Shown here piece after piece: positions 210 to 34,403 of a DNA stretch of 64,000 nt (within the stretch, counting starts at the first letter, position 1; every line of letters begins with the position of its first letter). Both the position numbers and the translations under genes were made by a program. Below the pieces are notes generated by a model, which saw only the letters and a program-made list of their open reading frames with translations, had not been told where the DNA came from and ran no database searches. This DNA comes from Saccostrea cucullata (lineage: Eukaryota), in assembly GCF_032062105.1 (NCBI RefSeq), contig NW_026925088.1, positions 62,001-126,000 of the forward strand, given 5' to 3'.

Positions 210-3200
210 ATGGGAAAGCTTGGAAAATTACAAAAGAGCAGAAAACACAAAAAATTAAAGAATGTAGGTGCTGAATATGTCAATGAGTATAGGGGGTAAG
301 TTATTTCTTATTCTCATTCAGATACGGAAATAAACAGGATAATTTAGATAAAACTTGCAAAGGAATACTTATCAGCTCGAATTTCTTCAGCTATTGTAAA
401 GTATTGTTATGATTTTATACGTTAGAATTTTATGTTTTGATACCAACAAGTACATGTGATTTTTATAGGAAGCCTTCCAATTTAGCACCAACAAGTAGTG
501 AACAAGATGTACCCAAGAAAGTGAAAAACATCATGAAATATCAAGGAAAAACACCACGACAAATACAGAAAGAATATATTCAAAATAACAGCAAGAAAGG
601 TATATGATAGTATATGTCATGTTTCTTTATTTTTGAAGTGTAGATCAGTAAGTGATCAGTGTAGCAGTGTTTTCCTTAACTTGAGGCTTAAGAAACGGTT
701 ACTGGCCAAATTACCAAATACATGTATACCGATTTGAAATTTGAAACAGAGGTTTTCTTTCCATTAATCTACATTCATGTGTTTTCTGTCTCGTACACCA
801 TTTAGTGTAGCGTAATGGAGAGAAAAACTCTGGGTTCCGACTTTAGCATGCAGGTACATGTACTGCATTCCTTGCATGGAGAGTGTTCATGTCTAAGTAA
901 TGGTTGGACCCATTCTATCTAAGTGTTTTAGAGCTAATCGGAGCAAGATTCTTCAATACTAAAAATTTTGTAACAATGTCACCAATCTTAATCCTCCCAG
1001 TGTCATCTGGCATTACATGATAATACTTTGTCAGTATTAATGCATTTTGGATGCGTTTTGTCTTACTCTTGCTTCACCAAAAAAATGTCTTTGAGATTAA
1101 TTATATGTAAAACTCGTTTAGTATGAACACGGATATTGCGAATTTATGGATATAGCAAAGTCGTCTTGGATCCCGAGCTATATTAATTTAACGAATTCCT
1201 TATACGGATTTAATGAATTATGGGTATAAGTCCCAGTGACTTTGTTATAACGGAGTTTTACTGTACTTGTTTTATGTAGGAAAGAAACATGTTTACATGG
1301 AGCGGGGAATGACAAGACCTATGTCCGAGGCTCCAAAATTTGTACAAGGAAAGAGAGAAAAGAGTAAAGATTTCATGAAAAGGGTAGAAGTAGAGACAAG
1401 AAAAGTCCTACACCGACATCAACTGTCCCAGAAATTTAAGGTTAGTGTATGATTCAGAAATAGAATTTGTGGTCCTTGGGGTAAATCATGTCAACAAAGT
1501 CATTGATTGTCAACTCAGGGTGATCATGGATGTTTTGTGGTTCATTTCAAGAGAAGGTTTAAGGGTTCTTTTATAATATTGAAATAAAATGGGTACAATC
1601 GAGCCACTTTGATTAAAGTTATGAGTAAGACTTAGATGGCTAGAGTTATGCCCCTTGGACTTAGAAAAAAATCAATTATTTGCAGTTTTCGTTTATTTTC
1701 TTTGCAGCAATTGCATATCCTGAAATAAAATTCAGTATACAGATTTATCATAAAAATATCTAGGTCAAGTTCTGTTTTGGGTACGATTGAGCCATCTTTG
1801 ATAGAGTTATGTCCTTTGGACTTAAAAAAAATTCCAATTATGGGGGGAGGAGGCATAAGTATTGTACAAACATCTCTTTTTATCAATTTTGAAGTGTAGA
1901 AATGTTTTTTTTTTTCAATTATTTCTTTGATTAAATATACCATGGATTAATGTTATTTAGGCAAAACTATTTTAAATGAATAGGAATTGTAACTATAAAT
2001 TACATAATATTACACTGACATGTACAAGTGATTTACTTTGTTGTTTCAGATGGATATGGATGCCTTAGAAGCAGGAGAAATTAAACGGCACAAGAAAAAG
2101 ATGAGTGAAAAGCAGAAAGAGTAAATAAATTAAATAAAAAAATAACTTTTCATATGATTTCAAATTGAATTCCATGAAATTCAATTTTCTACATAATTTT
2201 GTTAAAGTCGTAAAGTACGAGAAAAAGAAAGTTGAAATTGATTATGATGTCATAATGGATCTAGAACCAAAAAATTAGTCAAAAGTCATTTACTAGTATT
2301 AAAACACCAATTACTGATATTGAAACATTGATGTATTTTCCTGATCTTGCTATATGACAGTACTTACTGACAATTATTTATACTCTGTAGGAGATTGCAA
2401 CAGAAAAAGCAGAAAAAGTCTGAAAAGAAGAGAAAGAATGTGAATGAATTTGATGACTTTGAAGGTAAATTGTGTAATGGAAATGAAACTTTATGTTATG
2501 TATGCTAGTCATTTCTTTTTGAGGTGCTCTTGCTGCTGAACTTAAGTTTAAGCATTAATTATTTTAATACTTAATTCAGACAGAGTAAAGTTTGGCGAGG
2601 TGGCCAATGAGCCCCCATCCCTTACAGCTCTACCCAGGAAAGCCATCAAGGAGGAATCTGTCCCCAGGGTAAGTCACCAAGGGGGGCCCAAACTCGAGGA
2701 TTTTATAGAAGACGCCTGTTTTGTCTGTTGTCTTAACATCTTCACAAATAGATTTTTCCCAGAATTTCTTATTCAATTTCACCTGCATTTGTCACAAAGA
2801 ATCCTTGGTGTTTGGGATTAAATTAAGGACCTCTAACCTTTTCTCAGTGGGATAGTAGAGAAATATTGAGAATAGGGTAGGGTATTTCAAAGTCTTTTCA
2901 ATAACCACTGATTCAGAAATTGTTCAACCCTATAGTCCCTGGTGTTAGAATCCATATATGAAAAACAGAACATGCAGCTACATGTATAGGTTAAATATAA
3001 TGCACTTTGGTGACCGTTTAGGTCCATCGGAAGCATGAAAGCTGAAAATACATGTAGTTTTGAAAAATAGGAATCATGAGAATTTCATGAATAAAAATGT
3101 ACATTTTTTATTCATTTATATAATATTTATTTCAGCCTGGGAAGAAATCATTACTTCTGAAGGAGATAATAGCAGATAATGCTTCTGTTACTCCATCTAG

Positions 3201-3348
3201 TGTGGGATCATCATCCAAGCGTGAAATTGGACAATCAATCAAGCGTAAACATATGTCACTGGCACAACAGAGTATTATGGACAGAGAAAGAGAGAATGCA
3301 ATAATGTTATATAGACAGCAAAGACAGAAAAAATTAAAAACCTTTTGA
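210..3348 (+). CDS. CCDC137: Coiled-coil domain-containing protein 137 (nucleolar), 7 coding exons, 274 aa
   Basis: Exons 210-295, 469-599, 1280-1440, 2050-2120, 2391-2464, 2580-2668, 3136-3348. All introns are GT-AG and phases join into one 825-nt ORF. The Lys-rich protein carries CCDC137-like motifs NLAP..EQDVP, DRVKFGEVANEPPSLTALPRK, PGKKSLLLK and SLAQQSIMDRERENAIMLYR. Confidence 0.9.
1105..1264. mobile_element. Short TIR element (Tc1/mariner-like MITE) in CCDC137 intron 2
   Basis: Imperfect terminal inverted repeats GTAAAACTCGTT ... AACGGAGTTTTACTGTA. Confidence 0.45.
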
Positions 3349-3408
3349 CACAATGTATTTTGATTTAATTGATCTTTAAAACAAAGCCATTTTTTTCAAA
3401 AATAAATA

Positions 3409-3610
3409 TTTTTAGCTCACCTGAACCAGAAGCTGAAGTGAGCTTTTCTGATTGAAGAGTATTTGGTGTCTATCTGTCTGTCTGTTTGTCATCTGCAAAA
3501 TTTTCACAACTAGAACATCCTAGCCAAATTCAACAAAACCTGCTGAAAGCATCCTTGTGTGAAAGGGTTCAAGTTTCTTCAAATGAAGGGCCACATCCAT
3601 TCTCAAGTTA
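3409..3610 (+). mobile_element. 5' fragment of pearl/HINE (non-autonomous Helentron) element
   Basis: TTTTTAGCTCACCTGA...AGTGAGCTTTTCTGAT plus (GTCT)n; same family as 48300-49360. Confidence 0.6.
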
Positions 3611-3924
3611 TTGAGCGGTTTGATTTACTTTATTATTCTATTAATTAAAAATCCCTCTGATTGTACACACAAGTGTTCTGAAGTTAACAGTAAGGATGCC
3701 AGTGTTCCCCATTGTCAACACACACGTATGTTGTCTTCAGAGACCAGATCTTCCAACAAAGACTGTGCTCCTTCATCAACTGACTTGTTTTATATTTCTA
3801 AAGCAAAATTTATTAAAAACGATATGAAGAAGAAGAAAATTGCTGTGGTCTTTATCTCAACATTTTTTGTCTCAATGTGTTTTCAAGTAACAATAGCTAG
3901 TTTCATCCATATGTTGACTTGATA

Positions 3925-4090
3925 TATCTCAGTGAACTTGAAATAAAGGACTCCACAGAATCTGTCATACGTGTATTTGTTTAATACATGTATTCCGATG
4001 TTTTACTGAATGTAGACGATAAAGGTCAAACTAACAACTAAATTGTTTGACAAACAAGATGACTTCAGTTTTTTCATCGTCAACTTTTAG
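3925..4090 (+). mobile_element. Penelope-like RT fragment
   Basis: Decayed ELEIKDSTES...LTTKLFDKQDDFSFFIVNF, matching the larger copies at 10.2-11.1 kb and 18.8-21.5 kb. Confidence 0.55.
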
Positions 4091-4353
4091 TTATGTAGTA
4101 ATATTTCTCTCTAAATAGTGTTCAAATACATTATTAAACATGCTCTTAACAAATACAAATTGATAATTTACTGACAAAAGCCATCCCCTCTCCAGTTCAA
4201 TTTCTTGCCACTTTGGTGATAAAATGTTTAAATACTTTATTATTTTTATATAATTATTATCAACCATATGCATTGGAAGATTGAAAGGGCGGGGTGTGGG
4301 TGGGTGGGGGATCTGCACAAGGTCGTTCACCTTCTTTTATCACGTGTAGACAA

Positions 4354-6494
4354 AAACTAAATATAGATTACTGTAATGTAAAGAACACTGATATACAAAA
4401 CCCGTACTTTTATTTTCAAGGGAAAAGTAAAAACCCAGAATTTGAAAAATCCGGATTTTATTATAAAATTTTACTTTCTAAAAAGAAACAAAAACCAATA
4501 ATGGAAACTAAATGGTCAAAAGAATTCAATAGAATGAATGGACAATGGAAAAATATCTATACAGCTAAGATACTAAATACTTCTGATAAACAGATAACAG
4601 AATTTAATTTTAAACTTTTACACAGCCAACTGAATTGTAATTTAATATCATGTTAATAAATGGAATAAAGAGGTGGCAAAAAATTGTACATCTTGCGGAC
4701 AAGTAGAATATATTAAACACTTAATTTTTGAATGTGCAGACTCAAAATGAGTATGGGAAAAAATATCTCAAGTATTGAATTTAAATCTATCCTAAAAACA
4801 TATTGTTGTAGGATTTTATAATGAGTTCAATAAGACAACAATGATTTTTAATAATGTCATATCAATTGTGGGATACAAAATATATAAATATAAAATGAAA
4901 TGTAGGTTGCAAAACGAAATAGTAAATGCAAATGCAATGTTAATTTTTTTGAAATCGTCTTTGTATCAGTATTTTTAATAGCAAAGAATGCAAAAAGTAT
5001 GGCAAGCCCTTTTACTATTTATTCGTGAAATAAAAATTTTCTCTCAACAAGAGAGATATCTCTCTAGCATATAGATATATCTCTTTAGCTTATAGAGATA
5101 TGACGAAAAGAGATATCTTATACCTTAGAGAGATATCTCTTTAAACAAAAGAGATATCTCTTTATGTGAGAGAGATATCTCTTTTACTTAGAGAGATATC
5201 TTTATAAGCTAGAGAGATATCTCTTTAAGCGAGAGAGATATCTCTTAAAGTTAGAGAGATATCTCTTATCGAGGTCAAAAAAGATATCTTTCTTAGTTAC
5301 AGAGATATCTGTAGATTTTCAGAAAGAGATATCTTTATAAGCTAAAGAGATATATCTTTTTCCAGTGATGCTTAAAATGGAATAATTAATTCTCCACTTT
5401 AAAACAAAAGTGAAACAGGAAGTAAAGTCTCTGGAATAGTTTCGATGTTATAAGAAAAAAGACTGAGCAATTAGCAATTACCCAGAATAATACATGTACT
5501 GTAGACAAAAATGCTATAAATCCTTTACTTGAAACAAAAAATAATAATGGTAACTTCGTTGATAAAAATGCTTAAAGTTTAATATTCAGGAAAACGAAAG
5601 CATACATGTATATATAATCTCAAATGCAATGGACCGAATTTTCTCAGCTTATGAAATAATCAACTATTTCTAATTTGAGTATCCGTCAATATACTTCCGG
5701 TAAGGGAGAAGTCATTTTGGAAACATGAAGAGAGATATCTCTTTTTGAGAATAGACACGTTTAAAAGATATCTTTTCACTTTAAGAGATATCTCTTAAGA
5801 TAAATGAAAGATATCTCTTTTACTTAAAATAAAGATATCTCTTTCTCCAAAAGTAAAAGAGATATTGTGAAAGAGATATCTCTTTAACGTTTAAATCTCT
5901 TTTACGTAAGAGATATCTCTAAAGGAGAAAGAGATATCTTTACAAGTGGAAGAAATATCTCTCTAATAAAAAGAGATATCTCTCTAAGTATAAGAGATAT
6001 CTCTCCAAGTTTAACAGATATCTCTTTCTCATAGAGATATCTCTTTAAAATGAGAGATATCTAGGTATCTTATTTTTTAAGAGATATCTCCCTAAAATGA
6101 GAGATATCTCTGTAATTTTAAGATAAATTTTATTTTCCGAATAAATAGTAAAAGGGCTTGCCATAAAAAAGTGTTAAATCCAATTACCATCTTTTAAAAA
6201 AAGTTAGCAGATGAACTATAATTCTTTTCTATATATGTTGTAATTAAATAGATATTATATCTATATATTTATTTGATATAAAATGTTTTTCAATGAAATA
6301 TTTATGTCTATTTGTGAAAATGAAATTTTAGTAATGATAAATAACCATGTGTAAATTTTTGTAAATTGAATATTGACAAATATACCGATCCAGGGAGCTC
6401 CTGGCACCCCAGGTGAGGTATTAACCGAGGGCCTCTGAGAAAGTCTTGACTCAAACTTTGTTGTTTGTTATTGGAAATAAATGTATTTAAAAAA
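4354..6494 (+). mobile_element. 5'-truncated L1/Tx1-clade LINE (ORF2 C-terminus + 3'UTR + A tail)
   Basis: Decayed C-terminal zinc-knuckle region (FNFKLLH...NCTSCGQVEYIKHLIFEC...VW), AATAAA and A-tail at ~6476-6494, and a 15-bp TSD ATCACGTGTAGACAA at 4339-4353 and 6495-6509. Interrupted by the element at 4998-6165. Confidence 0.8.
4998..6165. mobile_element. Non-autonomous TIR DNA element with TATGGC termini, 6-bp TSD and internal GAGATATCTC palindrome arrays
   Basis: 28-bp perfect TIR TATGGCAAGCCCTTTTACTATTTATTCG / CGAATAAATAGTAAAAGGGCTTGCCATA; AAAAAG duplicated at 4992-4997 and 6166-6171. Confidence 0.85.
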
Positions 6495-7174: not shown

Positions 7175-8532
7175 CTATTTATTCAGTGTTACATTGTCAT
7201 ATTCTTCTTTGGAGATTTGTCTGAAGGCTTTTCTTCGGTTGTCCTGTCTACTGGTGTCTTTCAGGGGTTTCCCCGGCTTTGCCCCACGCTTATCTTTTAC
7301 GTCACTGTTCCTGTTTACCTCAACTACTTTAACATAATCTGAACGTTGACCCTGCTTTAATGTCCCACAACACGTCCCTAGTTCTTCTGAAGAAGTTGAT
7401 TCTTGTGACGAACCATTGTTTTGCTCCCCATCGCACTGGTTGTAATTTGTATGTTTTTGTCTAAATTTAGCTTTCAAATGTCTACAGTAACATGTAAACG
7501 ACCTCCAGTAAACCTTCTCTAATTCTTCTGAAAGGCTAAGGTGGCCTTGTTTGAGTGATTCCACCATACATTCATATAATGAAGGGTTGGTCCTCAAAGC
7601 ATCACAAAATTTCACCCATTGTTTCGTACAATCTTCACAGCTCAGAATACTTTCAGCAATTGTTGCTTCTATTAGCTTTTTCTGGTAGAAAGTGTCTATG
7701 ATTTCATACACTTTCACATTAATTTTTATTCTGCACACAACACATTTCAATTTGACATCGTCGATATAACCTTCCTGTACTTTAACACTGTAAGCATCAC
7801 GTAAACGTTTTGCAAGAAGTGGATATGCTTCTTCAAGAGAATTGATAAAATGCCTGAAACTTTGTACATCGCGATTTTGTAACCTAAACAAGAGAGCACG
7901 CGATTGGCTACTTCGATTATCCTCCCCCGCGCTGGAGCTCGTGTCGCGTATTGCCTCAGCTTCGCTGGACAGAAAAACTTTAGTTTCAACTAAATAGTCC
8001 AAGACATTCGTAGTGCGTAAATCAATGTCCATTAGAGCTTTATGTTCCTCTTTTAATACGTCTTTATGAACATCAATGTCAAGTGATGGTAGAACTATGT
8101 AAAAAAAAAAAAAAAAAAAAAGAAATATTATTTGCATGAAAAACACATCGTGAATATTAAATAGCTATAATTTTTTTCATAACTTCAAAGAAATTTTATC
8201 ATCTTGCAGGATAAGCAGAATTGTACTTACGATCTGATAGAATAGACGTCCACGATCCTCCACTGCTACAGGAGGACACCGTGTTCGAAAGATCAGGATG
8301 TCGCGAGAACTTGTTTGTAGATATTGTATGAAGCCGAATTTCACTTTGGAGATCGCTTACTTGGACTTGGAGTTCTTGAAGTTTAAGTAAAACTTGATTG
8401 AGGGTGTTTTCCGACTGTGACAAATTGAAAGGAGAAGAAAACCTCAATTTTTAATTTTTGATATTTTTTCTATTAAAATACGTATGGAAATTAAAAATAA
8501 ATTAATGTTACCTCTACATCTTTGGTTCCCAT
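7175..8532 (-). CDS. CARD-domain protein A: coiled-coil + CARD + Cys-bracketed CARD-like domain + basic tail (~374 aa)
   Basis: Exons 8532-8512 (MGTKDVE, in-frame TAA directly before the ATG), 8414-8231 and 8094-7175, with GT-AG introns in phases 0 and 1. CARD pattern VLKEEHKALMDIDLRTTNVLDYLVETKVFLSSEAEAI...SQSRALLFRLQNRDVQSFRHFINSLEEAYPLLAKRL. The ORF-track N-terminus (MFFMQIIF...) is intron polypyrimidine tract. The first exon is less certain. Confidence 0.8.
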
Positions 8533-8907
8533 TTAAAATGCTCACATAGACATGTACACTGTGGTAACATTTGATTCTGCAAGGGTGACGACGTCTTCCT
8601 AAATGTAAAACAGGATGTTTACAGGTGTGTTTTCCCATCTGTTTTCGATTTTACGGAGGGAGATACCGTGGGTATTTTAAATCAGCGTGACAGTGCACAT
8701 AAAATCAGGGACACCTAGCTCTTGTAACACCAAATTTTCCATATCTTTATTTTAGAGCAAATATGCAGAAGTATTATTAAGTGCAACGAAATTATCAAAC
8801 CTGATAGTAAGTAATAAAGGCCATAAATGACATTATACTATAAATCTAGAGTCGGGTTAATAAAACATCTTGTCGTTAGACTCTCTTGACCGATAAAGTG
8901 GTTTATA

Positions 8908-9100
8908 TACCGTATACATATTGCGGATTTCTTGGCGGATGTAAAATTTGGCGTTGCCTATGCTAATAATTTTTGCGTAAATTTAGCGGATTTTTGCATA
9001 TGAACACTAAGAGTAATGAATATTTTAGTGATCAGCGGGCTACCATTAAAACGCCAAAATAAGCGAAAATTAGCACCCCGCTAAAATAAGTCGCTATGCA
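8908..9100. mobile_element. Degenerate MITE-like remnant
   Basis: TACCGTATA..GCGG / CCGCTAAAAT..CGCTATGCAG ends with internal TTTGGCG/CGCCAAA inverted motifs. Confidence 0.35.
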
Positions 9101-10189
9101 GAAAAAAATCATTGTGACTTGTGCAAAAACGTCTGGTTGATCCTTCAACTTTGAAGTTCAAATGCGGCATCCGAATCATGTTATATTTCCCAATCATAAT
9201 AAGGAGCACAGCGCGTGTGACCGTTCGACAGGAGATGCTCACTCCTCCATGGCACCTGATCCCACCTCTGATGATTCATAGTTTATTTCGTTTATTTTTT
9301 CCCATAAAGGTTCTGCATTAAACGCAACGATGTTATGTCACATTCATTAATATCAGTGCATTTCAGTATGTGAGGGGAAACTTTGTTAGCATTCCACTGA
9401 AAACTTGCAAACAAGGAAGACTTTTAAAGCTATAAATCAGTTTTTATATCTTTTAAATCTGAAATAAGACACTGTAATGTTTTTGTGATATTTATTCTGC
9501 ACTGAATAACATTAGAGATGTGTTATCCATATTTATTAAGAGACAACAAACAGAAATAAAGCTCAAACCTTTAAATTCTTACTTCTATTGCTCCAAAATT
9601 AAAATGATCTTGATGCTGAACGTGATGTTCTTGCTTAATATATTTAACATTACACAGAATCTCGAGAAAAGTTTTAAAAATCTGAAAAAACCTTTAACAT
9701 GTAAAATGAAATATAAAGGACATACAGAGTAGGCAGGCAACGGGAAATCGTATTGCACAATTAGTTGTAGATTCATTTTAATCAGACACCCTCGATCAAA
9801 TTGGGCTAGAATCAGGGGAAGATTTTACGAAATGTGCGTTCACTATAACAGGGGAAACTGGACATGTTATAGTGATACTGAATCTTTACCCTAATAATTC
9901 ACTTTTGATTGTTTGAATATATGTGAAGTCTGCAAGGATTAAGATGGAACCACAATTTAGGGTCATGTTTTTTATTTGAATAAAAGCGTGACACTCTTTT
10001 AAAATCTGATGAAAATGAAACAACAACAACGGCATTGTTGCCACAAGTATCATCTACGAGAACGTTGAGGTCCATGAGCCTCTTGTTACCTTTGCTTCGC
10101 TTTCAAATATTGAGCAAATGCATAAGATTTTCCTCTGGTGTTTTCATCAAATCATTATGACAAATCTAGAAATTCACAAATTAAACAAT

Positions 10190-11100
10190 ACAAAATTTGA
10201 GTAGAGCAAACACGGTACTTCAAAATATCAGAAGTGGGATCAGGTGCCATTTGGGAGTGAGCATATCCCCTGCCCATCGGTCACACCCGCCGTGTGCTCC
10301 TTGGCATGATCGGGAAATATCGGAAAATTCGTCGACAATTCAGTGTGTAAAATAATGTCCTAACAATTAGTATGAAAAACGTCAGTCAGCATTTGACTCA
10401 ATGATAAATTGTATTTGCTAACAAGATCATTACTAGTATATCGACCAAAGAACTTACTAAAATGATGACTTTAAACGAGACTGCTGATATTCTTGTTTCA
10501 GCAACCTGTTTGTCATTAATTTACCTCGTTTTAGAAAGTGTTCATACGTAGAGCATGCTCTTGCGTATCGAATCAACTGAGAGAAGTTAACGTCATCACG
10601 TTTATCATAAAGCATGGTTGTTAGATTACAATTAATTTTGTCTCTTTCAAGTAAAATATCTAAATATGAAACAGATGTGTCAGACTCTGTGGTATCTTTT
10701 ATTTCAAGCTCACTGCGATACATGGCGATATATCGTATCAACATAAGAATGGAAATAACCATTCTAGATTGACAATCGTCGATATACATGTATCTGCATG
10801 TAAATGTCAAGCTGAAGGCGACAGCAAGTGGTTCTTCTTTTCACGTATAAGATTTTGGACAAATAATAACAGGGTGGAATTGGTACCCATGGGAATTCCA
10901 ATAGATTGTAGGAAAACCTGGTCTATAATAACCACATAGATATTGTCAATCAAAAACTCAAACACATGTTAATGTCAACTTCAGAGAACTTGTGTCTACA
11001 ATCAGAATGGTTTTAACAAGATAATTTTGCTAATGACCAATGATAAGGTAAGTAAATTTACGAGTTCCATTTTTATTGAAAAAACAGTTTGTCAATGATA
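10190..11100 (-). mobile_element. Penelope-like retroelement fragment (RT C-terminal half + 3' end; Naiad-like motifs)
   Basis: GIPMGTN, YIDD, SYLDILL, LYDKRDD and SQLIRYARACS motifs with frameshifts; conserved 3' module GGCGGGTGTGACCG...GGCACCTGATCCCAC. Confidence 0.8.
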
Positions 11101-12391
11101 TAAAAAAAAAAAATTGTGGGGAATAAAGTGAAAAGTGGTAAGTTTTATGTTATTAATTTTGGTAAAATTTTGTGAGTTCGAATTTTCAAATAGTTCCTTG
11201 GAATTTCTAAGTATCAACATCTGATTTACTGCGTAAGCTCAATGCATGCTGATTTAGCCTCTTTCCCTGGCCATCCCATAAGAGAAACGGGTAAATGGTG
11301 GGGTTTTTTTCCAATGCAGACTAATGTCTGTACCTATTATATTTGTTAAAAAATTATTTTAAAATTTTCTGATATTTAATGACAAGACTTTCAAATATCC
11401 CTTTGACGTAGAGTTACTTTTATATCGGTTTGTCATCGTATACTACTGAGTTAAAGTTAGATTTAAAACAATGTAACCAATATTGATAAAGATCTTAATT
11501 AATAAGTAAACATGTTTACAAGTATGTTAAACTTGGGCGGAAATTAGGATCTATTTTTATGATATAAATAATATATTGGAAGTTTCTGCTTTCGAATAAA
11601 TTATAATCTTGCACACGACCATTGACTTACATTAATAAATACTTTTGACAACTTTTAAAATTCTTTTTAAAAATGACAATTGATTATTTAGAGAATTATT
11701 TGAATTATTTGCTTAGTATAATTTGTAACCAATTACTAAAACATTTCATAACGTAACTGAAATAAAAATTTTATAAAAATCTTAAATTAAGGAACAACAA
11801 CGTTAACTCGCAACAAGTTTATAAGGAACCGGACTTCCATGTACGACATGTAAAAGATGTTCAAACAAGTTAAGTTGTAAGCCAACAAAGCTGTCACCAC
11901 TCAATGAAATGTACATTTATTTTAAAAACATTTTAATGAAATCGTCACGTGAATTATGCGTCAAGTATCGTATAAATACACAATTTTTAAAAAGAATTAC
12001 TTTTTTTTCATATGCAGAGATAAGAACTTTGTAAAAATAACAGAACAAACTACATGTAAATCCAAGGCAATTTATACGTTTGAAGAAATACACAGATGTT
12101 GAGTAAAAAGGGTAATGTAACCGTCTTCCAGCTTCTGTTGCAATAGAAGCATATGTAAGGGTTCGTATAAATACAGCAAACTTGCTTGGTATCATATTTT
12201 TTATGACCCCTTTAAGCTTATGGTATTTATTTGTATGTTGTAATATCCCCTCGCCCATTGATATGTTAATAATCATATGATCATGATGGGGAACATCTCA
12301 TTGACTTTCTGTTTGAAAATTTTCATCCTTCATCAAAAACTGTCTTTATGGGTGTTTGTTTCTTTATTGCTCATTCGGTTATCTTCAATGT

Positions 12392-15300
12392 CTAGCTTTC
12401 TTCACATTTCAGCTTGGATTCCCTTTTCTTTATCGCTTGTCTATGAAATTTTTCTCTAAATCCGGATTCACTGAATCTGCTCACAAATTCCATAGAAGCA
12501 GTTTGTTGTTGTTCGCGTTCAGTTGCGTCGACGTCTATGTCAGATAGGACTTTACTTACACCCAGTTCGATGGAAACATCGCTATGTTCAACTGGGGATT
12601 GGGGAACTGTTTCTATTTTGGTTGATTCTTCACGCTTTCGTTTTGCAGATAACCGTTTACAAAAACAGTTAAATTTTGGCATGTCTTTAACTTTGATTAG
12701 CTCCTCTGACAAACTTTTGTACTTTGGCAAAAGTGAATCTGCTAGTGTCATAATGGCGTCTACATTTTTAATATAAGGCTTCAGTTGTTCCCAGCCCGTC
12801 CTAAGATCCCCACATTGGTTGATGTCTCTCATTGTCTTTGATTGTATGAACTTTTGGCTGTAAAATTTGTCTATGACATCACGTGGGTGAACGTTTTCTA
12901 TAATTTTACACACAGTACATGTTAGACGTCCATTTTTCTTCTCTTTGTACATTATACTTAATGATCTTTTTAACGATTTGTGAAGATGGTTGTGGTCACT
13001 TTCTAAAGCATCAACAAAACTGAGAAATGGGCCGTGACCGCGCTGTTCTAACAGTAACAGAAGGCTTCTGGTTTGATCTTTCTTTCCCCCTCCCCTCCTC
13101 TTTATTTCCTCTGCATCGCTCGCCGTAATGGCGTCATCTGCAATTAACTTGTCGAGGACATCTGTACTGTTTGGATCGAAGTCTTTCAAAATATTTTCAT
13201 GTTCTTGAATAAGAACCTCTTTGTATACATTGGCACATGCACTTGGAAGATCTGCAATCACAAACTAAATATGCTTATCATATATTGAAACAAAGAACAC
13301 GTCCATTGAAAAATGAATGGGACACTTATCTATAGTATTTTATTTTACATACCGGTATTTTGGTAGAAAATTTACCTTCAATTGGTATGTGGAAGGATCC
13401 ATCACTGCTACTGCTACTGTATAGAGAATCTTCACTACAACAAACCGCAGCAAACCTCCTTAGACGGGGCTTGCTGGGTCCACTCGTCAAGGTCTTGGCA
13501 GTTTGTTTAACGACTCTATTTAAATTTCTCTGTTCATCATCAAACAACTGTTCGATATTTGAGACTCGCCTCGTGAGAACATCAAGTTTTTCATTGGTGG
13601 TTTGAAGCTGGCTCGAAAATTTTTCCTCCAACTTTTGAAATTGCTCATCAAGTAGATACTGGAATATATATTATTGTTTTAAGTGTGAAGAAAGTGTAAT
13701 TTGGAGAAAAAAGATTTTTCTTGAAACACTATAGGAATGATTTATTCTTTATATTCTTTACGTTCAAGCCCTGTATCAATAAATGGTTAAAAAGATGCTT
13801 TTGAAATGAATGAATGTTGTTTTATTTTGTTATTGGAATGTTGAAACTTGAGAGAGAGAGAGAGAAAGATAGAGAGAGAGATTTGTACCCCCGTTCTCGA
13901 AGATTGGGGTACATATTTTTCTTTGATTTTTGAACAAGAGACTCTTCCTTAAGTATTTAACCTTATCTTAACTCGTTAGTGGCTATATTTCACATATGTA
14001 TTTCTTTTGGTAAGACTTTCTGTTTGCCAGAGTTAACTTATTAACCCTCGCCTTAGAGATTTACCTGCTTTTGAAAAACTTTGACCATAACTTCTTGTGA
14101 CAAGACATATTCCTTTGTTTAAGCTTTTTTTATATGTTGACCTTTTAATTTGACTCGTATTCGAGCCATACGGGGACATCAGTGTTGCATAAACACACTA
14201 GTTTAAAATAATGAAAAAAGTTTTCTCGATGCATATTTACGCAGAGTATGCACTAAACCCTATGTAAACATTGTCATTCCATGCGATGATATATTAATTG
14301 AACATATTTACCAAGAAGGCGTTATCCCTACTTGTTCCTGGTTATAGCTCTAATCAGTCAAACTACTCCTGTTGACATGTTTATATAAGGTGCAGATATA
14401 AAATTAAGGAAATTTTTAAAGATGTTTAACTTAATACATCTAAAAATATAAAAATCGGAGACTTTTCATTTAAATATTTATTTATTTATCGTTCGTTTAA
14501 ATCTCCTTTTGATTTATTACCATTTAAAATGTATGAGGGTATTTCATATATGTAGACTACCATAAATTCTAGGCCCCAAAGTATTGTAAGAAAAATACAA
14601 GTACTTTTTATTACTTTTACACAAGACAGGTGAAAAGTTCATTCATAATTTCAGAAGGGCAATTACTATTTATCACTGGAAACAATTTATTACCAAAAGA
14701 AATCAAGTCATCCAATACCTTTAGCTTTTCTACAATATCCCCTGGTCCTTCTTCAAAACTGTAAGAAAGAACACATTTTTATTTAAGAAAACAAATCCAA
14801 AACTTATTTAAAAGTACATATTAAAATTTATTTTCTGTACAGTAATGCAGCAAAGGCTAGTTCAAATTCAATTTTTTAGATTAATGAAGAAGAATATAAT
14901 ACAACTAGAGCAAAGCTCGTTGCAAAGCAACGAGTAGGTCTTCCGTCCTGTTTTGACCGGAAGTGACGTCAACAAAAGAAAGCAATGAGCTTAGTCGTCT
15001 CCAGTCACTTTATAATTTCAATTTTGTATCAAAACCTTAAAAAATAAGCTATTTTTGGCTACTTCCGGTTTGACCGGAAGTGATGTCGACGGACGGAAAA
15101 TTAGGTTTTATGCTCCCAGTGACATATGTTACCCAAAAACTTGTCAAGAACGGCAAAAATATGCATTTTCTGACTACTTCCGGTTTGACCGGAAGTGACG
15201 TCGCTGGACGCATTTTGACGACTTCAATAGATTAAGCTTGACATTTTGAACAACTTTGCTTCTTGGATGTATTACAAATTCTCAATACTTTTTGAGATAT

Positions 15301-15880: not shown

Positions 15881-17798
15881 TCAATAAAGTGATCGGTCGG
15901 CAGGGGATGGTTTCTACTTCATTGCACCTGATCCCATTTCATGATGTTTTGGAGATCCGTGTTTGCTTTGCTCCTATTTTGTATTGTTTTATGGACTTTT
16001 GAGCTTAAATACTGTTCGTTATCTTCATATATTTCAATCAACTTTGTGAAGAGAACTTTCAATTGCAAGGATTTCAGATAACAAATTATTTTACATGTGA
16101 AAAAACAAATTAGGGTGCTAATTACAATTTACCTTCTTTACAGCAACAGCAAAGATTTGTGGAATCTAAAGGTTTTGATTAACTAATAGAAATGTATAAA
16201 ACTTTTATATATTTCTATTAATTAATCAAGATAAAAGGTAACTCCATTTTAAAAAGTATGGATGATTTTCAGTAAATCATTGCTGTGAGTAAGTAAATGA
16301 TTCATTTGGTATAATACACATGGCATGTATACTGTTAAAGACTTTCTGTAAGTTAAATGCCAAGTGCATGCAAGAATTACTAGTATGTGATGTATCAGGG
16401 AAAGTTTGCTGTTAATTAAAAAAAATTAATCTAATATACTGTCAACATTTTATGTGTCAAAGACAGTTGGGTAAAGGCTAAAACTGTTTAAAAGAATATG
16501 AGATGCTATGTAGCACAAACTGACCCTCATCTTATACTCTTTTTAATATCTGTCTATCAAATCCTCCCCCTACGTACCGTCTTGTTTGAATTTTTATTGG
16601 CAAAAACAAAAAAAAATATGCAAGAATATAGATGATAAAAAAATAATAATTTAGCGGCAACTCAATTTGCATTCTTTAGAATTATATTGACATTTTTTAC
16701 TATTTAATTTTCAAAATAAATGAACATTTTTCATTGCAACATCATTTTGCATTTGAAATCTTCAATAAATACATAAAAAATAAAATTTCTTCAAAAAAAA
16801 AATCAAATAAGATTTGTACCTGTAATATTTAAATTTACAGTTTCATTATTTTTTTAAGAAACAGAAAAATACGATGAGAATTATAACTAGGGTTAAATCA
16901 ACTTCTGACATGAATAAAAGTTATTAAAGATTTTCTCCGTCTATGGAAGCAGGTATTAACTGTGTATATTTATCTGTTATCAGTTGATTCATAACTTAAC
17001 AAGTTTACAAAGGAAACAATTCTTATTGGTGAACTATTTGTCTACTTTTCTTATTTATAAAAGAGACAAAATGATACATGCAAGTACTATGCATTTTTCA
17101 GTATCCGTTTTATTAAATTAAATAGGGCATTCTGTCACAAGGCTACATGTCGCTTGAGTGCCCATGAAGTAACCATTGAACAATAAATACATTGAACAAC
17201 GCCCATTTCTTTAGAAACGAGAAAGGAATAAATAACACACTTCCCGCGACAAGCAACATGAGTTACATTGAAATTAAGAGTATACATTGTTCTTATTACA
17301 ATTGGAAGCATAATTATGATTTTATCATGTTTATTGGAGTTAGCAACAACATCGAACATGCTTACCTATGACTCTGACCTCCAGGTATTGATCATTTTTT
17401 TTTTTGAAGTTGTTTTTCCAAACAGAAAATGTTACCACTTCAATGCGCTTCATTGTAACAATGTCTGCGGTATACATTGTCTTACAATGGAGCTACAGCA
17501 AAACATATCCATTGACTCTGACCTCCTGAGATTTTTTTTTTGAAGTTGTTTTTGAAAATAAGTTTATACACTGTAAAGATTTAAATGCAAGTAGTCTCTA
17601 AAACTTTAAAGCGCCCTCATTGTGATCTTATTTGAGATAGGGTATCTATAAATATAACATGTCAGTTTTATATACGTTTACTTTAATCAGTTCTTTATTT
17701 TAAATGAACCTTTCTCGAGACAGATTCATTATATTTTATCTTAATTTAAATCTAAACATGGCAACTTACCCCGAATCTGACTTCTGCAGACCTGCCAT
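12392..17798 (-). CDS. CARD-domain protein B, paralog of A: DSG motif + coiled-coil + CARD + Cys-bracketed CARD-like domain + tail (~403 aa)
   Basis: Exons 17798-17770 (MAGLQKSDSG), 14758-14719 (FEEGPGDIVEKLK), 13658-13376 and 13251-12392; GT-AG introns in phases 2, 0, 1 give one 1212-nt ORF. CARD: VLIQEHENILKDFDPNSTDVLDKLIADDAITASDAEEI...DQTRSLLLLLEQRGHGPFLSFVDALESDHNHLHKSL. The intron before the CARD exon has the same position and phase as in gene A. Confidence 0.82.
13850..13880. repeat. (GA)n microsatellite
   Basis: Direct reading. Confidence 0.9.
14903..15880 (-). mobile_element. HINE / non-autonomous Helentron-like element in CARD-B intron 1
   Basis: Subterminal IR AGGTCTTCCGT/ACGGAAGACCT, terminal hairpin CTCGTTGC-AAA-GCAACGAG, (AAT)n tract and internal TTGACCGGAAGTGA repeats. 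Confidence 0.75.
15890..16035 (+). mobile_element. 3'-end fragment of the Penelope-like family
   Basis: Similar to 18800-18930 (reverse complement) and 9205-9270. Confidence 0.55.
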
Positions 17799-21529: not shown

Positions 21530-22445
21530 GCAAGAATATAGATTTATAATAAAGTTAAGCAGAAGATTAAAATTTAGCGGCAACTAAATTTGAATTCTTA
21601 ACAATTATATCGACATATTTTACTATAAAATTTTCTAAAACATTGATCATTTTTTATTTCGACATCAATTTGCTTTTGAAATCTTTAGGAAATGCATAAA
21701 AAATACATGTAAATTTATTATAGTTCTGTACTTGTAAGATTTAAAAATACCGTTTTATTATTTTCTAAAGGAACGGGAAAACATATGAAAAAAGATGAGA
21801 ATATTAAGCTTATATCTGCTTCTTGTATTATTATATTAGTCATTTTTTTCCCTCTATCGAAGCATATGTATTTACTGTGTCTATTTCATGACATAATTAT
21901 CTGTGCAATTTTTGGTATCCTTTATATTAAAATTAAATAGGGCATTCGATCAAAAGGCTGTATGTCGCTTGAATGCCCATGAAGTAACCATTGAACAATA
22001 AGTAACAATGTCTCTGGTTTGTCTTTCCAAAGCAGCTACATCAAACCATGTTCTTTGAATTTCAATTGACCTGCTGAATTATTTTTATTCATTTTAAAAA
22101 TCATTTTATACACTAAAGATTTAAAAGCAAGCAGTCTTTAAAACTGGCCGACGCCCTCAGTTTGATCTTACCTGAGGTAGAGCATATATAAATGTAAGAT
22201 ATCAATTTTACTTACATTTACTTTTATTTAATCAGTTCTTTATTTTGATTGAACCTTTCTCGAGACAGATTCATTATATTTTATCTTAATTTAAATCTAA
22301 ACTTGGTAGCTTACCCAGAATCTGCCTTCTGCAGACCTGCCATGCTCCAGCGACGCAGGCCAGGTATTTGCAGACTGCTTGTTTAACGCATTATCACCTT
22401 GTACTTATTTTCTGAAGCGGGACGATTCAAACTATTATTTTACTT
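21530..22445. repeat. Segmental duplicate of ~16620-17905 including CARD-B exon 1 and promoter
   Basis: Collinear similarity throughout, e.g. AAATAGGGCATTC...GCCCATGAAGTAACCATTGAACAATAA, a 52-bp identical block 17706-17757 = 22251-22302, and GAAGCGGGACGATTCAAACTATTATTTTACTTA. A third partial copy lies at ~18640-18783. Confidence 0.85.
22315..22343 (-). CDS. Duplicate (alternative) first coding exon of CARD gene: MAGLQKADSG
   Basis: ATG GCA GGT CTG CAG AAG GCA GAT TCT GG|GTAAG: intact ATG and donor, same length (29 nt) and phase as 17798-17770. Confidence 0.65.
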
Positions 22446-24144: not shown

Positions 24145-24790
24145 TTGTCTTCCGACGACATTGCCCTACTTTCATCAGCAATGAACCATCTTCAGTCTAA
24201 AACAACCATATTGGAAGAAAAATCCGCAAAAGTTGGGTTGAAGCTGAATGCCAAGAATTGCAAAGTGATAAAGATAAAAAGCAAGAGTGAAATCAGCCTG
24301 CCAGTTGGAAACAGCGAAGCCGACGAGGCGGACAACTTTACCTACCTCGGCGCCAATATCACTAAGAATGGAGATGGGACTTCTGACATAAGGAAGAGGA
24401 TAGCACTGGCCGGTGCATCCTTCAGGCGACTAGCAAACATCTGGAACACTACAGACAGTCTAAAGATTTCTTTCAGTAGAAAGATAAAAGTCTCCCTCTT
24501 TAGGAGTCTGTTCCTCCCTGCATTGCTATATGGATGCTAGACTTGGAAGTTTACCAAGACAGAGGAAAAGAAGATTGACAACTTTTAAAACACGGTGTCT
24601 CAGAAGGATTCTTATGGTCAGATGGCAGCAGCATATCCCAAACAAGACTGTTCTGGAGATGGTAGATGTAGAAAGCATCAGTGGTGAGGTGAGGAGGAGG
24701 AGATAGAATTGGATCGGCCATGTGCTTAGAAAGGACCCAACAGATGACTGTGTTGTGGCCCTCGGGTAGACACCTGAAGGGAGAAGTAAG
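24145..24790 (+). mobile_element. RTE-type LINE RT/C-terminal fragment
   Basis: DDIALL...GLKLNAK...FTYLGANI...DIRKRIALA...LLYGC, followed by a frameshifted WIGHVLRK. Confidence 0.75.
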
Positions 24791-33599: not shown

Positions 33600-34403
33600 A
33601 TGGCGTCTCCGACGAAATCTCCCACTAAGAAACCTGCCGCCAAAAGCGCCCCTAAACTCCATCCGACCTTCCTGGACATGGCCATTGAAGCCATTCAGGC
33701 CAATACAGACACCAAAGGCGCCTCCGTGCCATCAATCCGGAATTACATTACTGAAAAATATAAGACTGTAGACCCTACGACAGTTCGCTTCCACCTCAAA
33801 CAAGCTCTGGCGAAGGGCGTGGAGAAAAACATGATCTTAAAAACTAAAAAATCCGAAGAAAGACCCATCATGACCAGCAGATTCAAAGTGAACAAGGTTA
33901 AAAAAGCGGCAGAGAAAAAGAAACGGACGGACAGCGAAAACAAAAAGGCGGCAAAACCAAAGGAGACCAAGAAAAAGGAGACGGCAGCCAAGAAAACCAA
34001 ACCCAAGGCCACGAAACCAAAGGCGCCTAAAGCAGCAGCGAAGTCGCCTAAGCCTAAAGCTAAGAAGTCTCCAGCGAAGGTGAAGAAAACACCTGTCAAG
34101 GTCGTCAAACCAAAGGTAACTCCATTTTTATTTTCATTTTTAATAGCAAAAACGCAAACTATTGATAAAGATGAATTGAAAATATACCATAACGTAATGT
34201 GGCATTGTAGAAATGTTGATGCGACAGATTAAAAACTTGTTAAAGGCTGGCATTTGATGATTTGTGGCGCCAAATCATCATGAATGGCAAATATTGAATT
34301 ACACATAGATTTATGTACAGAAAATGATACATTTCAGTTGTTTTAATATTTTCAGACTCCAAAGAGGCCACAAAGTGTGAAGAAAATGAAGAAGGCTAAG
34401 TGA
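33600..34403 (+). CDS. Linker histone H1, oocyte/embryo type (B4/H1M/H1foo-like), 187 aa
   Basis: Exons 33600-34115 and 34356-34403 (phase 0, GT-AG). Winged-helix globular domain HPTFLDMAIEAI...KGASVPSIRNYITEKYKTVDPTTVRFHLKQALAKGVEK with the B4-type TVDP and RFK signature; K/A/P-rich tail with S/TPxK sites. Confidence 0.9.

What the first reader, a model, noticed from the sequence alone, without database searches (positions are those of the whole stretch)
7175..13658. Tandem pair of coiled-coil/CARD/CARD proteins whose second CARD is bracketed by a putative zinc clasp (CxxC...CxC)
Seen: two diverged paralogs share exon structure and architecture. After a clear CARD comes a second ~85-aa helical unit with a CARD-like pattern (I..NV....IID.FY....I ... 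W..... L..SL....SLSEEL). In both proteins this unit starts with CxxC (KCVVCRI / TCTVCKI) and ends with FxCxC (FTCYCR / FNCFCK), although overall identity is low. Established: death-fold N- and C-termini lie close together, and tandem CARDs nucleate signalling filaments (RIG-I/MDA5, NOD2). Inference: the four Cys form a Zn site that staples helix 1 to helix 6. This would be a metal/redox-sensitive CARD in a stand-alone adaptor or decoy with no helicase, NACHT, caspase or TM domain. I do not recognise this architecture as a named family.
Basis: partly seen in the sequence, partly recalled or inferred. Interest (0 to 1): 0.8.

Follow-up and report, generated by a model that had tools for sequence, protein, structure and literature searches.

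The report
Tandem-CARD oyster adaptors with cysteine clasp
Two neighbouring oyster genes encode adaptor proteins with two death-fold (CARD) modules, and the second module is bracketed by four cysteines that are almost never lost across molluscs, most likely a zinc site, which defines an unnamed mollusc-wide protein family.

Summary
The window is Saccostrea cucullata DNA. Two minus-strand paralogs, LOC134268029 (374 aa) and LOC134268045 (403 aa), are 32% identical and share intron position and phase. Each has a helical N-terminal exon and one large exon encoding a Pfam CARD followed by a second unit of about 90 aa.

The second unit is a real CARD:
- Profile-profile comparison with CARD1 gives 97.7% probability (E 1.4e-12).
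- An AlphaFold model (pLDDT 86.7) is a six-helix bundle.
- Its 34 best matches among 48,161 PDB chains are all CARDs (Z 11.3 to 7.7).

The CxxC...CxC cysteines are among the eight most conserved columns in 54 homologous domains with 31% mean identity (54, 53, 53 and 50 of 54). Every member with a taxon label is a mollusc, from five bivalve orders and two gastropod lineages. None has a curated name, and I found no paper on them. The oyster genome holds at least 15 such loci.

A zinc clasp is the best reading, but it is inferred. The tools gave no coordinates, so the Cys geometry could not be measured, and metal content needs the bench. Known precedents are zinc binding by the CARD9 CARD and the CD4/Lck CxC+CxxC zinc clasp.

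Verdict: a new variant of a known kind, of moderate to good interest.

The parts
8512..8532 (-). Gene 1 (LOC134268029, P0001) coding exon 1, MGTKDVE
   Evidence: Its translation equals P0001 aa 1-7 and a gtaaca donor follows.
8231..8414 (-). Gene 1 coding exon 2: N-terminal long helix (putative coiled coil) and Ser-rich linker
   Evidence: Equals P0001 aa 8-68, with a tcacag acceptor and gtaagt donor. AF2 models a helix at residues 4-41 with pLDDT 54-73.
7175..8094 (-). Gene 1 coding exon 3: CARD1, clasp-CARD, basic helix and disordered tail, with the stop codon
   Evidence: Equals P0001 aa 70-374 and is entered through a phase-1 intron.
7796..8062 (-). Gene 1 CARD1 (P0001 aa 80-168)
   Evidence: Pfam PF00619, E 3.4e-13, 49.8 bits against a cut-off of 23.9.
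7484..7744 (-). Gene 1 second CARD with the Cys clasp (P0001 aa 186-272). CxxC codons are at 7733-7744 and CxC codons at 7484-7492.
   Evidence: hhalign against CARD1 97.7%. AF2 six-helix bundle, pLDDT 86.7. CARDs fill the top of the structure searches.
17770..17798 (-). Gene 2 (LOC134268045, P0004) coding exon 1, MAGLQKSDS(G)
   Evidence: Equals P0004 aa 1-9 and a gtaagt donor follows.
14719..14758 (-). Gene 2 coding exon 2
   Evidence: Equals P0004 aa 11-23, with a ttacag acceptor and gtattg donor.
13376..13658 (-). Gene 2 coding exon 3: helical/coiled-coil segment and SSSSDGSF linker
   Evidence: Equals P0004 aa 24-117, with a ttccag acceptor and gtaaat donor.
12392..13251 (-). Gene 2 coding exon 4: CARD1, clasp-CARD, basic helix and tail, with the stop codon
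   Evidence: Equals P0004 aa 119-403 and is entered through a phase-1 intron.
12968..13216 (-). Gene 2 CARD1
   Evidence: Pfam PF00619, E 8.4e-11, 42.2 bits against a cut-off of 23.9, on ORF residues 16-98.
12659..12919 (-). Gene 2 second CARD with the Cys clasp (P0004 aa 229-315). CxxC codons are at 12908-12919 and CxC codons at 12659-12667.
   Evidence: Aligned with the gene 1 domain.
12578..12595 (-). Gene 2 PVEHSD, a match to the TRAF6-binding consensus PxExx(aromatic/acidic)
   Evidence: The motif is conserved as P[VI]EHS[EDY] in 11 of 12 members of the oyster gene 2 orthogroup. It is absent from gene 1 and is not family-wide. This is a consensus match only.

Best explanation
The two genes are tandem paralogs of a mollusc-wide, so far unnamed family of cytosolic death-fold adaptors.

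Each protein has the following parts, in order:
- an N-terminal helical (probably coiled-coil) oligomerising segment;
- a canonical CARD;
- a second, divergent CARD;
- a short basic helix;
- a disordered Ser/Thr-rich tail with short conserved motifs.

The second CARD carries a CxxC at the N-terminal cap of helix 1. A CxC sits 8-10 residues after helix 6, at the cap of a seventh helix. The most likely role of these four cysteines is to bind one Zn2+ in a Cys4 site. That site would tie the C-terminal extension back onto the start of helix 1 and so lock the fold of a CARD that has drifted far from the consensus.

The pair of CARDs would then act as in other tandem-CARD proteins. Once brought together by the N-terminal helix or by an upstream sensor, they would form a helical seed. 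That seed would recruit CARD-bearing partners such as caspases, RLRs or other adaptors. The tail would recruit downstream factors; in gene 2 it holds a conserved TRAF6-type motif.

Shown: the gene models, paralogy, CARD1, the CARD fold and homology of domain 2, Cys conservation, family range and the lack of a name.
Inferred: zinc binding, oligomerisation, signalling partners and an immune or apoptotic role.
For: Paralogy and gene models.

CARD1: Pfam above cut-off in all 15 oyster homologs and in 38 of 40 distant members.

Domain 2 is a CARD:
- hhalign A3 against A5 gives Prob 97.7, E 1.4e-12, over 74 columns.
- Pfam CARD is sub-threshold but spans nearly the full profile, positions 15-84 of 85, E 5e-4 to 1e-3.
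- The domain 2 HMM weakly hits CARD1 of the same proteins.
- The AF2 model of the domain alone has pLDDT 86.7 and pTM 0.77, with six helices plus a seventh.
- VIA-align against 48,161 chains puts CARDs in the first 34 places, Z 11.3 to 7.7, covering model residues 10-90. DD and DED follow lower down.
- Foldseek and Atlas agree.

Cysteines:
- They are present in 54/54, 53/54, 53/54 and 50/54 sequences, at 31% mean column identity.
- One outlier (P0049) has lost both residues of the CxC together.
- The model is confident around the CxC, with pLDDT 88 for residues 91-100.
- Both half-sites sit at helix N-termini, which is the usual place for zinc knuckles (established knowledge).
- There is no signal peptide or TM, so the thiols are in the reducing cytosol (sequences).

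Precedents:
- The CARD9 CARD binds Zn2+ with sub-nanomolar affinity, and this restrains filament formation (PMC6624267; PDB 6e25 is among the structural hits).
- CxC+CxxC form the CD4/Lck zinc clasp, and CxC...CxxC the Hsp33 zinc centre (my own knowledge).

Family:
- 48 proteins at E<=1e-3 among 1.84 billion representatives.
- All labelled members are Mollusca.
- At least 15 loci in this genome.
- Fusions to TIR and to a C-terminal hydrophobic anchor point to innate-immune signalling.
Against: - No coordinates were available, so the distance between the CxxC and the CxC in the model is unknown. AF2 does not model metals.
- CxC is an uncommon zinc half-site.
- There are no expression, interaction or metal data.
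- The full-length model from only 15 sequences gave pLDDT of only about 66 around the CxC.
- The two CARDs do not superpose on RIG-I/MDA5 2CARD as a rigid pair, rmsd about 18 A. A RIG-I-like lock-washer is therefore analogy only.
- The N-terminal helix is missing from many distant family members, so it is not a family-defining part.
- The TRAF6-type motif is confined to one orthogroup.
Confidence: 0.55

Rival explanations
1. The four cysteines do not form an intramolecular staple. Instead they work between molecules or as a thiol switch. Either the CxxC of one chain and the CxC of another share a zinc, as in the CD4/Lck zinc clasp, giving dimers or daisy chains. Or they form reversible disulfides that gate CARD polymerisation under oxidative stress.
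For: The CD4/Lck clasp uses exactly CxC+CxxC between two chains (my own knowledge). CARD9 and NOD1 CARDs form domain-swapped dimers, and the NOD1 dimers are disulfide-clinched (PDB 4e9m; PMC6624267). Conservation fits any joint function of the four residues.
Against: The start of helix 1 and the end of helix 6 lie on the same side of a death fold (established knowledge). AF2 places the CxC segment with pLDDT 88 in a monomer model. An intramolecular site is therefore the simpler reading. The cytosol disfavours stable disulfides.
Confidence: 0.2
2. The proteins are inhibitors rather than signal-forward adaptors, like CARD-only proteins. The clasped second CARD is a rigid pseudo-CARD that caps or masks CARD1, or caps the filaments of partners.
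For: They have no effector domain. The gene 1 clade sits on a long branch, which fits a fast-evolving regulator. In CARD9, zinc binding restrains filament growth.
Against: The tails carry conserved linear motifs: P[VI]EHS[EDY] and a basic C-terminal motif. Relatives are fused to TIR or to a membrane anchor. Both features are typical of signal-forward adaptors.
Confidence: 0.15
3. The cysteines serve something other than zinc or redox control, for example an iron-sulfur cluster, another metal (oysters accumulate Zn and Cu), or lipidation.
For: Only the conservation of four Cys, which does not identify the ligand.
Against: The spacing and the helix-cap positions are those of structural zinc sites. 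The strict CxxC and CxC spacing is not needed for palmitoylation. No Fe-S assembly context is known for death folds (my own knowledge).
Confidence: 0.05

Closest known systems
RIG-I / MDA5 N-terminal tandem CARDs (2CARD)
   Same: Two consecutive CARD folds in one chain. Foldseek aligns the full-length model to RIG-I and MDA5 2CARD over 189-216 columns. The domain 2 model matches duck RIG-I CARD at Z 9.4 and the second CARD of MDA5 at Z 9.0.
   Different: There is no helicase or C-terminal RNA-binding domain. The relative orientation of the two CARDs is not shared, rmsd about 18 A. RLR CARDs have no Cys4 bracket.
CARD9 CARD, a zinc-binding CARD (PDB 6e25; Holliday et al. 2018/2019)
   Same: It is a CARD whose stability and polymerisation depend on a bound Zn2+ near the start of helix 1 (PMC6624267). 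It is a structural match, Z 9.0, rmsd 2.5 over 79 residues.
   Different: CARD9 uses Cys10 and His73 within the canonical six helices. Here four Cys lie at the helix 1 cap and in a post-helix-6 extension, and they are conserved across a phylum. In CARD9 the coiled coil follows the CARD; here the helix precedes it.
CD4/CD8-Lck zinc clasp and the Hsp33 zinc centre
   Same: One CxC and one CxxC together supply four thiolates to one Zn2+. The Hsp33 site is redox-sensitive (my own knowledge).
   Different: The folds are unrelated. The CD4/Lck site lies between two chains. No sequence or structural relation was detected here.
Oyster MAVS (CgMAVS, KY630189; Huang et al. 2017)
   Same: It is a mollusc adaptor with a CARD followed by a second death-fold domain. 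It recruits TRAF6 (PMC5557890).
   Different: The second domain of CgMAVS is a Death domain. Read by eye from the supplementary cDNA, it has no CxxC...CxC bracket. CgMAVS also has a C-terminal TM, which the two window proteins lack. CgMAVS is therefore not a member of this family. One unionid family member (P0038) does end in a hydrophobic anchor.
CgCARDCP-1 (Wang et al. 2018, Fish Shellfish Immunol 79:120, PMID 29751033)
   Same: It is an oyster 'CARD containing protein', reported by its title to take part in LPS recognition and NF-kB activation (cited).
   Different: The paper and the sequence are not held, so membership could not be tested. No protein with that name sits in the C. gigas clusters of this family.

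Membership tests
CARD (Pfam PF00619), first domain | The Pfam profile scores above the gathering cut-off (23.9 bits) | tested here: met
   Gene 1 scores 50.4 bits and gene 2 scores 42.2 bits. All 15 oyster homologs match, as do 38 of 40 distant members.
CARD (Pfam PF00619), second domain | The Pfam profile scores above the gathering cut-off | tested here: not met
   The domain alone scores 19.1 bits, E 1.3e-3. Only 4 of 13 members match at E<=10, with a best E of 4.7e-4.
CARD subfamily of the death-fold superfamily, second domain | A six-helix antiparallel bundle whose nearest structures are CARDs rather than DD, DED or PYD | tested here: met
   The AF2 model has six helices and pLDDT 86.7. 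In the VIA-align search, ranks 1-34 are CARDs or CARD-template designs (Z 11.3-7.7). The first DD is at rank 35 with Z 7.7. This rests on a predicted model, not a solved structure.
CARD subfamily, second domain | Sequence homology to bona fide CARDs | tested here: met
   hhalign of the domain 2 profile against the CARD1 profile gives Prob 97.7%, E 1.4e-12, over 74 columns.
RIG-I-like receptors | [quoted passage not shown] | tested here: not met
   No helicase or regulatory-domain hits in Pfam. The proteins are 374 and 403 aa long.
MAVS / CgMAVS | A single N-terminal CARD and a C-terminal transmembrane anchor | tested here: not met
   The C-termini are hydrophilic. The second domain of CgMAVS is a DD without the Cys bracket.
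CARD-coiled-coil proteins (CARD9/CARMA) | An N-terminal CARD directly followed by a long coiled coil | tested here: not met
   The long helix lies N-terminal to CARD1 (residues 4-41). Nothing coiled-coil-like follows the CARDs.
Structural Cys4 zinc site ('zinc clasp') | Four conserved Cys in two closely spaced pairs | tested here: met
   CxxC and CxC are conserved in 54/54, 53/54, 53/54 and 50/54 sequences.
Structural Cys4 zinc site ('zinc clasp') | The four S-gamma atoms lie within tetrahedral reach of one ion | not testable with these tools
   Structure prediction returns no coordinates. Only secondary structure and pLDDT are available.
Structural Cys4 zinc site ('zinc clasp') | Stoichiometric zinc in the purified domain | not testable with these tools
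   This is a bench measurement.
CARD9-type zinc site | Ligands equivalent to CARD9 Cys10 and His73 | tested here: inconclusive
   VIA-align maps model residues 10-88 onto 6e25 residues 15-97. CARD9 Cys10 therefore falls outside the aligned core, and the CxC lies beyond it. No residue-level alignment was returned.

The most novel reading that the evidence does not exclude
The Cys4-bracketed CARD is a metal- or redox-gated polymerisation module. Zinc occupancy or thiol oxidation would decide whether the second CARD is folded and competent to seed filaments. A mollusc-specific family of innate-immune adaptors, with at least 15 genes in one oyster, would then couple cellular zinc or oxidative state to CARD signalling. 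These animals accumulate very large amounts of zinc.
Probability: 0.2. Interest if true: 0.8.

Novelty: new variant of a known kind. Interest (0 to 1): 0.55.

Why it matters
CARDs are the polymerising switches of apoptosis and innate immunity. How zinc tunes CARD9 filament formation is explicitly stated to be unresolved (PMC6624267).

A whole family in which four cysteines bracket a CARD and are kept more strictly than almost any core residue offers a natural, probably obligate, metal-bound CARD for studying that question.

It also adds an unnamed, expanded adaptor family to the bivalve immune repertoire. The oyster orthologs (C. gigas LOC105327447/8, C. virginica LOC111118310, O. edulis LOC130054382 and LOC125670130) are currently annotated only as 'uncharacterized'. 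Relatives fused to TIR or to a membrane anchor suggest where the family plugs into signalling.

Tried and rejected
I did not try another route and did not use read laying, so expression and splice junctions rest on the NCBI models and on transcript-length Logan contigs of homologs.
- Cys-Cys distances.
- Profile search of domain 2 against PDB sequences. The hits were weak. The best is a coiled-coil spike mimic and looks spurious. Two designed proteins built on the Apaf-1 CARD template were useful only as a lead.
- Pfam CpXC hit (E 0.02). Rejected as a side effect of the CxxC.
- The fish protein P0023 among the profile hits. It is a PYRIN-repeat/FIIND/CARD protein matched over the second half of the profile only, without the Cys. 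It is not a member.
- CgMAVS as the family's known member. Rejected, because its second domain is a Death domain without the Cys bracket and it has a TM. I read that sequence by eye from an OCR'd supplement and did not pass it to any tool.
- CgCARDCP-1. The paper and sequence are not held, so the question stays open.
- TRAF6-type motif as a family trait. Rejected, because it is confined to the gene 2 orthogroup.
- Taxon of the unnamed ENA and Logan members.
- Literature search by locus and UniProt identifiers found nothing.
- Joining exons. The spliced proteins used (P0001 and P0004) were returned by the database search with single-exon queries, and each exon was checked against them separately.

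Full report
**What is there**

The window is AT-rich eukaryotic DNA. These are LOC134268029 (P0001, 374 aa) and LOC134268045 (P0004, 403 aa).

The spliced proteins are those the database returned for single-exon queries, and every exon was checked separately against them.
- Gene 1 exons: 8532-8512, 8414-8231 and 8094-7175.
- Gene 2 exons: 17798-17770, 14758-14719, 13658-13376 and 13251-12392.

All boundaries are AG/GT. In both genes a phase-0 intron precedes the helical exon. A phase-1 intron sits just before the 'LPS' that opens the last exon. That exon encodes both CARDs and the tail in one piece.

Its span leaves out gene 2's first two coding exons; gene 1's short first exon lies inside the span but went unrecognised.

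**The observation**

The two last-exon products align at 32% identity over 224 residues (E 3e-29), with CxxC and CxC in register. Pfam CARD is above its gathering cut-off in both, at 50.4 and 42.2 bits against 23.9.

**Is the second unit a CARD?**

Pfam alone says 'not quite'. The domain on its own scores 19.1 bits (E 1.3e-3), although it covers profile positions 15-84 of 85. Four independent lines say yes.

1. A profile of 54 second domains (A3) compared with a profile of 45 first CARDs from the same proteins (A5) gives hhalign probability 97.7%, E 1.4e-12, over 74 columns from helix 1b to helix 6. The near-invariant Asp of helix 2 is aligned in both.
2. The domain 2 HMM weakly finds CARD1 within the same proteins.
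3. AlphaFold2 on the domain alone with the 54-sequence alignment gives pLDDT 86.7 and pTM 0.77. The helices are at 12-19, 23-31, 37-44, 49-62, 64-75 and 79-86, with a seventh at 97-111.
4. That model was aligned to each of 48,161 PDB representatives. The first 34 places are CARDs or designs on the Apaf-1 CARD template: CED-3/CED-4, Apaf-1, NLRC4, CARD9, caspase-9, ASC, RIG-I, MDA5, NOD1 and BinCARD. Their Z runs from 11.3 down to 7.7 over model residues 10-90. Death and death-effector domains follow at lower Z.

Foldseek on PDB and the ESM Atlas shape search give the same picture. The tool warns that helical bundles can reach Z of about 13 by chance. Here the uniformity of the list and the agreement with hhalign carry the conclusion, not the Z value alone.

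**The cysteines**

Among 15 oyster homologs the four Cys are invariant.

A profile of the domain was scored against 1.84 billion representatives. I spent the costly search because the novelty claim rests on absence of relatives. It found 48 proteins at E<=1e-3. Thirty-six of the 43 new hits (P0016-P0058) carry C-x2-C, then 60-110 residues, then C-x-C.

In the 54-domain alignment, mean column identity is 31%. The Cys columns are occupied by Cys in 54, 53, 53 and 50 sequences. They rank 1st, 2nd, 4th and 8th of all columns, alongside W53, D27, L74 and V20. One outlier (P0049) has lost both residues of the CxC together.

In the model, C11 lies just before helix 1 and C14 in its first turn. C95 lies in the loop 8-10 residues after helix 6, and C97 is the first residue of helix 7. 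The block containing the CxC has pLDDT 88.

The loop between helix 6 and the CxC varies in length by about five residues. A hydrophobic residue two positions before the CxC is kept. This is what a tether to a fixed anchor would look like.

**Why zinc, and how sure**

The proteins have no signal peptide or membrane span, and CARDs are cytosolic. Stable disulfides are therefore unlikely. Two closely spaced Cys pairs at helix N-termini are the classic layout of structural zinc sites (established knowledge). The start of helix 1 and the end of helix 6 lie on the same side of a death fold (established knowledge).

There are three precedents.
- CxC plus CxxC together bind one zinc in the CD4/Lck 'zinc clasp' (my own knowledge).
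- CxC...CxxC form the redox-sensitive zinc centre of Hsp33 (my own knowledge).
- The CARD9 CARD binds Zn2+ with sub-nanomolar affinity through Cys10 and His73, and this restrains filament formation by a mechanism the authors call unresolved (PMC6624267). The zinc-bound CARD9 CARD (6e25) is among the structural matches.

The decisive geometry test could not be run, because no tool returns coordinates. Metal content is a bench question. I put the intramolecular Cys4 zinc clasp at about 0.55-0.6. An intermolecular or redox version is at about 0.2.

**The family**

All members with a taxon label are molluscs.
- Oysters: Saccostrea cucullata and S. echinata, Ostrea edulis, Crassostrea/Magallana gigas and angulata, and C. 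virginica.
- Other bivalves: Pinctada, Tegillarca, Pecten and Sinanodonta.
- Gastropods: three Haliotis species and Gigantopelta.

Their names are 'uncharacterized protein', 'CARD domain-containing protein', 'hypothetical protein' and one misleading 'FK506-binding protein 5-like'. Thirty-eight of 40 distant members have a Pfam CARD directly before the clasp-CARD, so the two-CARD module is the family's core.

The S. cucullata assembly has at least 15 loci with a strong match, although some may be haplotigs.

Gene 1 orthologs exist in S. echinata and O. edulis. They form a well supported, long-branched clade (99/99). Gene 2 orthologs exist in all oysters sampled. The tandem duplication is therefore older than the Saccostrea-Ostrea split. 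The deeper branching is unresolved.

Variants are informative.
- A Haliotis rubra protein has two clasp-CARD units and a TIR domain.
- A Sinanodonta protein ends in a hydrophobic tail anchor, as MAVS does.

The N-terminal helix is present in the oyster, Tegillarca and some other members, but many distant members start directly with CARD1.

**Tails**

The CxC is followed by a basic stretch, for example KRLSAKRKRE, which is modelled as helix 7. Then comes a disordered Ser/Thr-rich tail.

In the gene 2 orthogroup, a P[VI]EHS[EDY] motif lies 22 residues after the CxC. It matches the TRAF6-binding consensus and is conserved in 11 of 12 members. It is absent from gene 1 and is not a family trait. 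A basic C-terminal motif (GFRxKFHRQAIKKR) recurs in looser form in Pinctada and Tegillarca. These are leads, not evidence of binding.

**Comparison with what is known**

The proteins work most like tandem-CARD nucleators (RIG-I/MDA5 2CARD) joined to a BCL10- or MAVS-style tail. They are members of none of these families.
- They have no helicase.
- They have no TM.
- The long helix precedes rather than follows the CARD, unlike CARD9/CARMA.
- The two CARDs do not superpose on RIG-I 2CARD as a rigid body, rmsd about 18 A.

The cloned oyster MAVS has a CARD, a Death domain and a TM (PMC5557890). Its cDNA in the supplement, read by eye, shows an ordinary Death domain without the Cys bracket.

One oyster 'CARD containing protein', CgCARDCP-1, has been studied functionally for LPS recognition and NF-kB activation according to its title. 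Neither the paper nor the sequence is held. No protein of that name is in the C. gigas clusters of this family. Whether it belongs here stays open.

Searches for the locus and UniProt identifiers of the oyster orthologs found no paper.

**Limits**

The homologs' transcript-length Logan contigs suggest that they are transcribed.

The fold evidence rests on predicted models. The taxon of the unnamed ENA and Logan members is unknown; the one contig fetched is a metagenome scaffold.

**Verdict**

The tandem-CARD reading is supported, and the family is real, mollusc-wide and unnamed. The zinc clasp is the best explanation, but it remains inferred.

This is a new variant of a known kind: a Cys4-bracketed CARD in a new tandem-CARD adaptor family. 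Interest is 0.55.

Noticed in passing
window 22314-22343 (-): This is a second copy of gene 2's first coding exon. It encodes MAGLQKADSG, against MAGLQKSDSG at 17769-17798. It matches the N-terminus of the S. echinata ortholog P0005 exactly.
   Followed up: partly
window 33600-34232 (+): An intronless 210-aa ORF with a Pfam linker histone H1/H5 domain (E 3.4e-17).
   Followed up: partly
window 24145-24540 (+): An ORF fragment with a sub-threshold reverse transcriptase (RVT_1) match (E 1.9e-4). It is probably a decayed retroelement.
   Followed up: no
window 12422-12463 (-), P0004 aa 381-394: The basic C-terminal motif GFREKFHRQAIKKR is conserved in all gene 2 orthologs. It recurs in looser form in Pinctada (GFNRKALRKK), Tegillarca (VFHRRAFKRRKRE) and gene 1 (RRKAFRQISK). 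Its function is unknown.
   Followed up: partly
window 13385-13408 (-), P0004 about aa 107-114: A Ser-rich motif, SSSSDGSF, lies between the N-terminal helix and CARD1. It is conserved in the oyster gene 2 group and in Tegillarca (DSSSSDGSF). It may be a phosphorylation or degron site.
   Followed up: no
P0031 (Haliotis rubra LOC124273048), residues 200-285, 431-514 and 647-731: Two clasp-CARD units, each with CxxC...CxC, followed by a TIR domain. This architecture links the module to TIR signalling.
   Followed up: partly
P0038 (Sinanodonta woodiana), C-terminus: A CARD, a clasp-CARD and a long tail that ends in a hydrophobic stretch resembling a tail anchor. The layout is MAVS-like.
   Followed up: no
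G000:C13668:147833-151402 and other contigs: At least 15 strong clasp-CARD loci occur in the S. cucullata assembly, including a second close pair 3 kb apart on contig C13668. Some may be haplotigs.
   Followed up: no
L001 (ENA ERZ23499351 metagenome scaffold), 2001-4400: An intronless 799-aa family member sits on a 5.2-kb scaffold of a metagenome assembly. This looks like eukaryotic DNA, presumably molluscan, in a metagenome. The organism is unknown.
   Followed up: no
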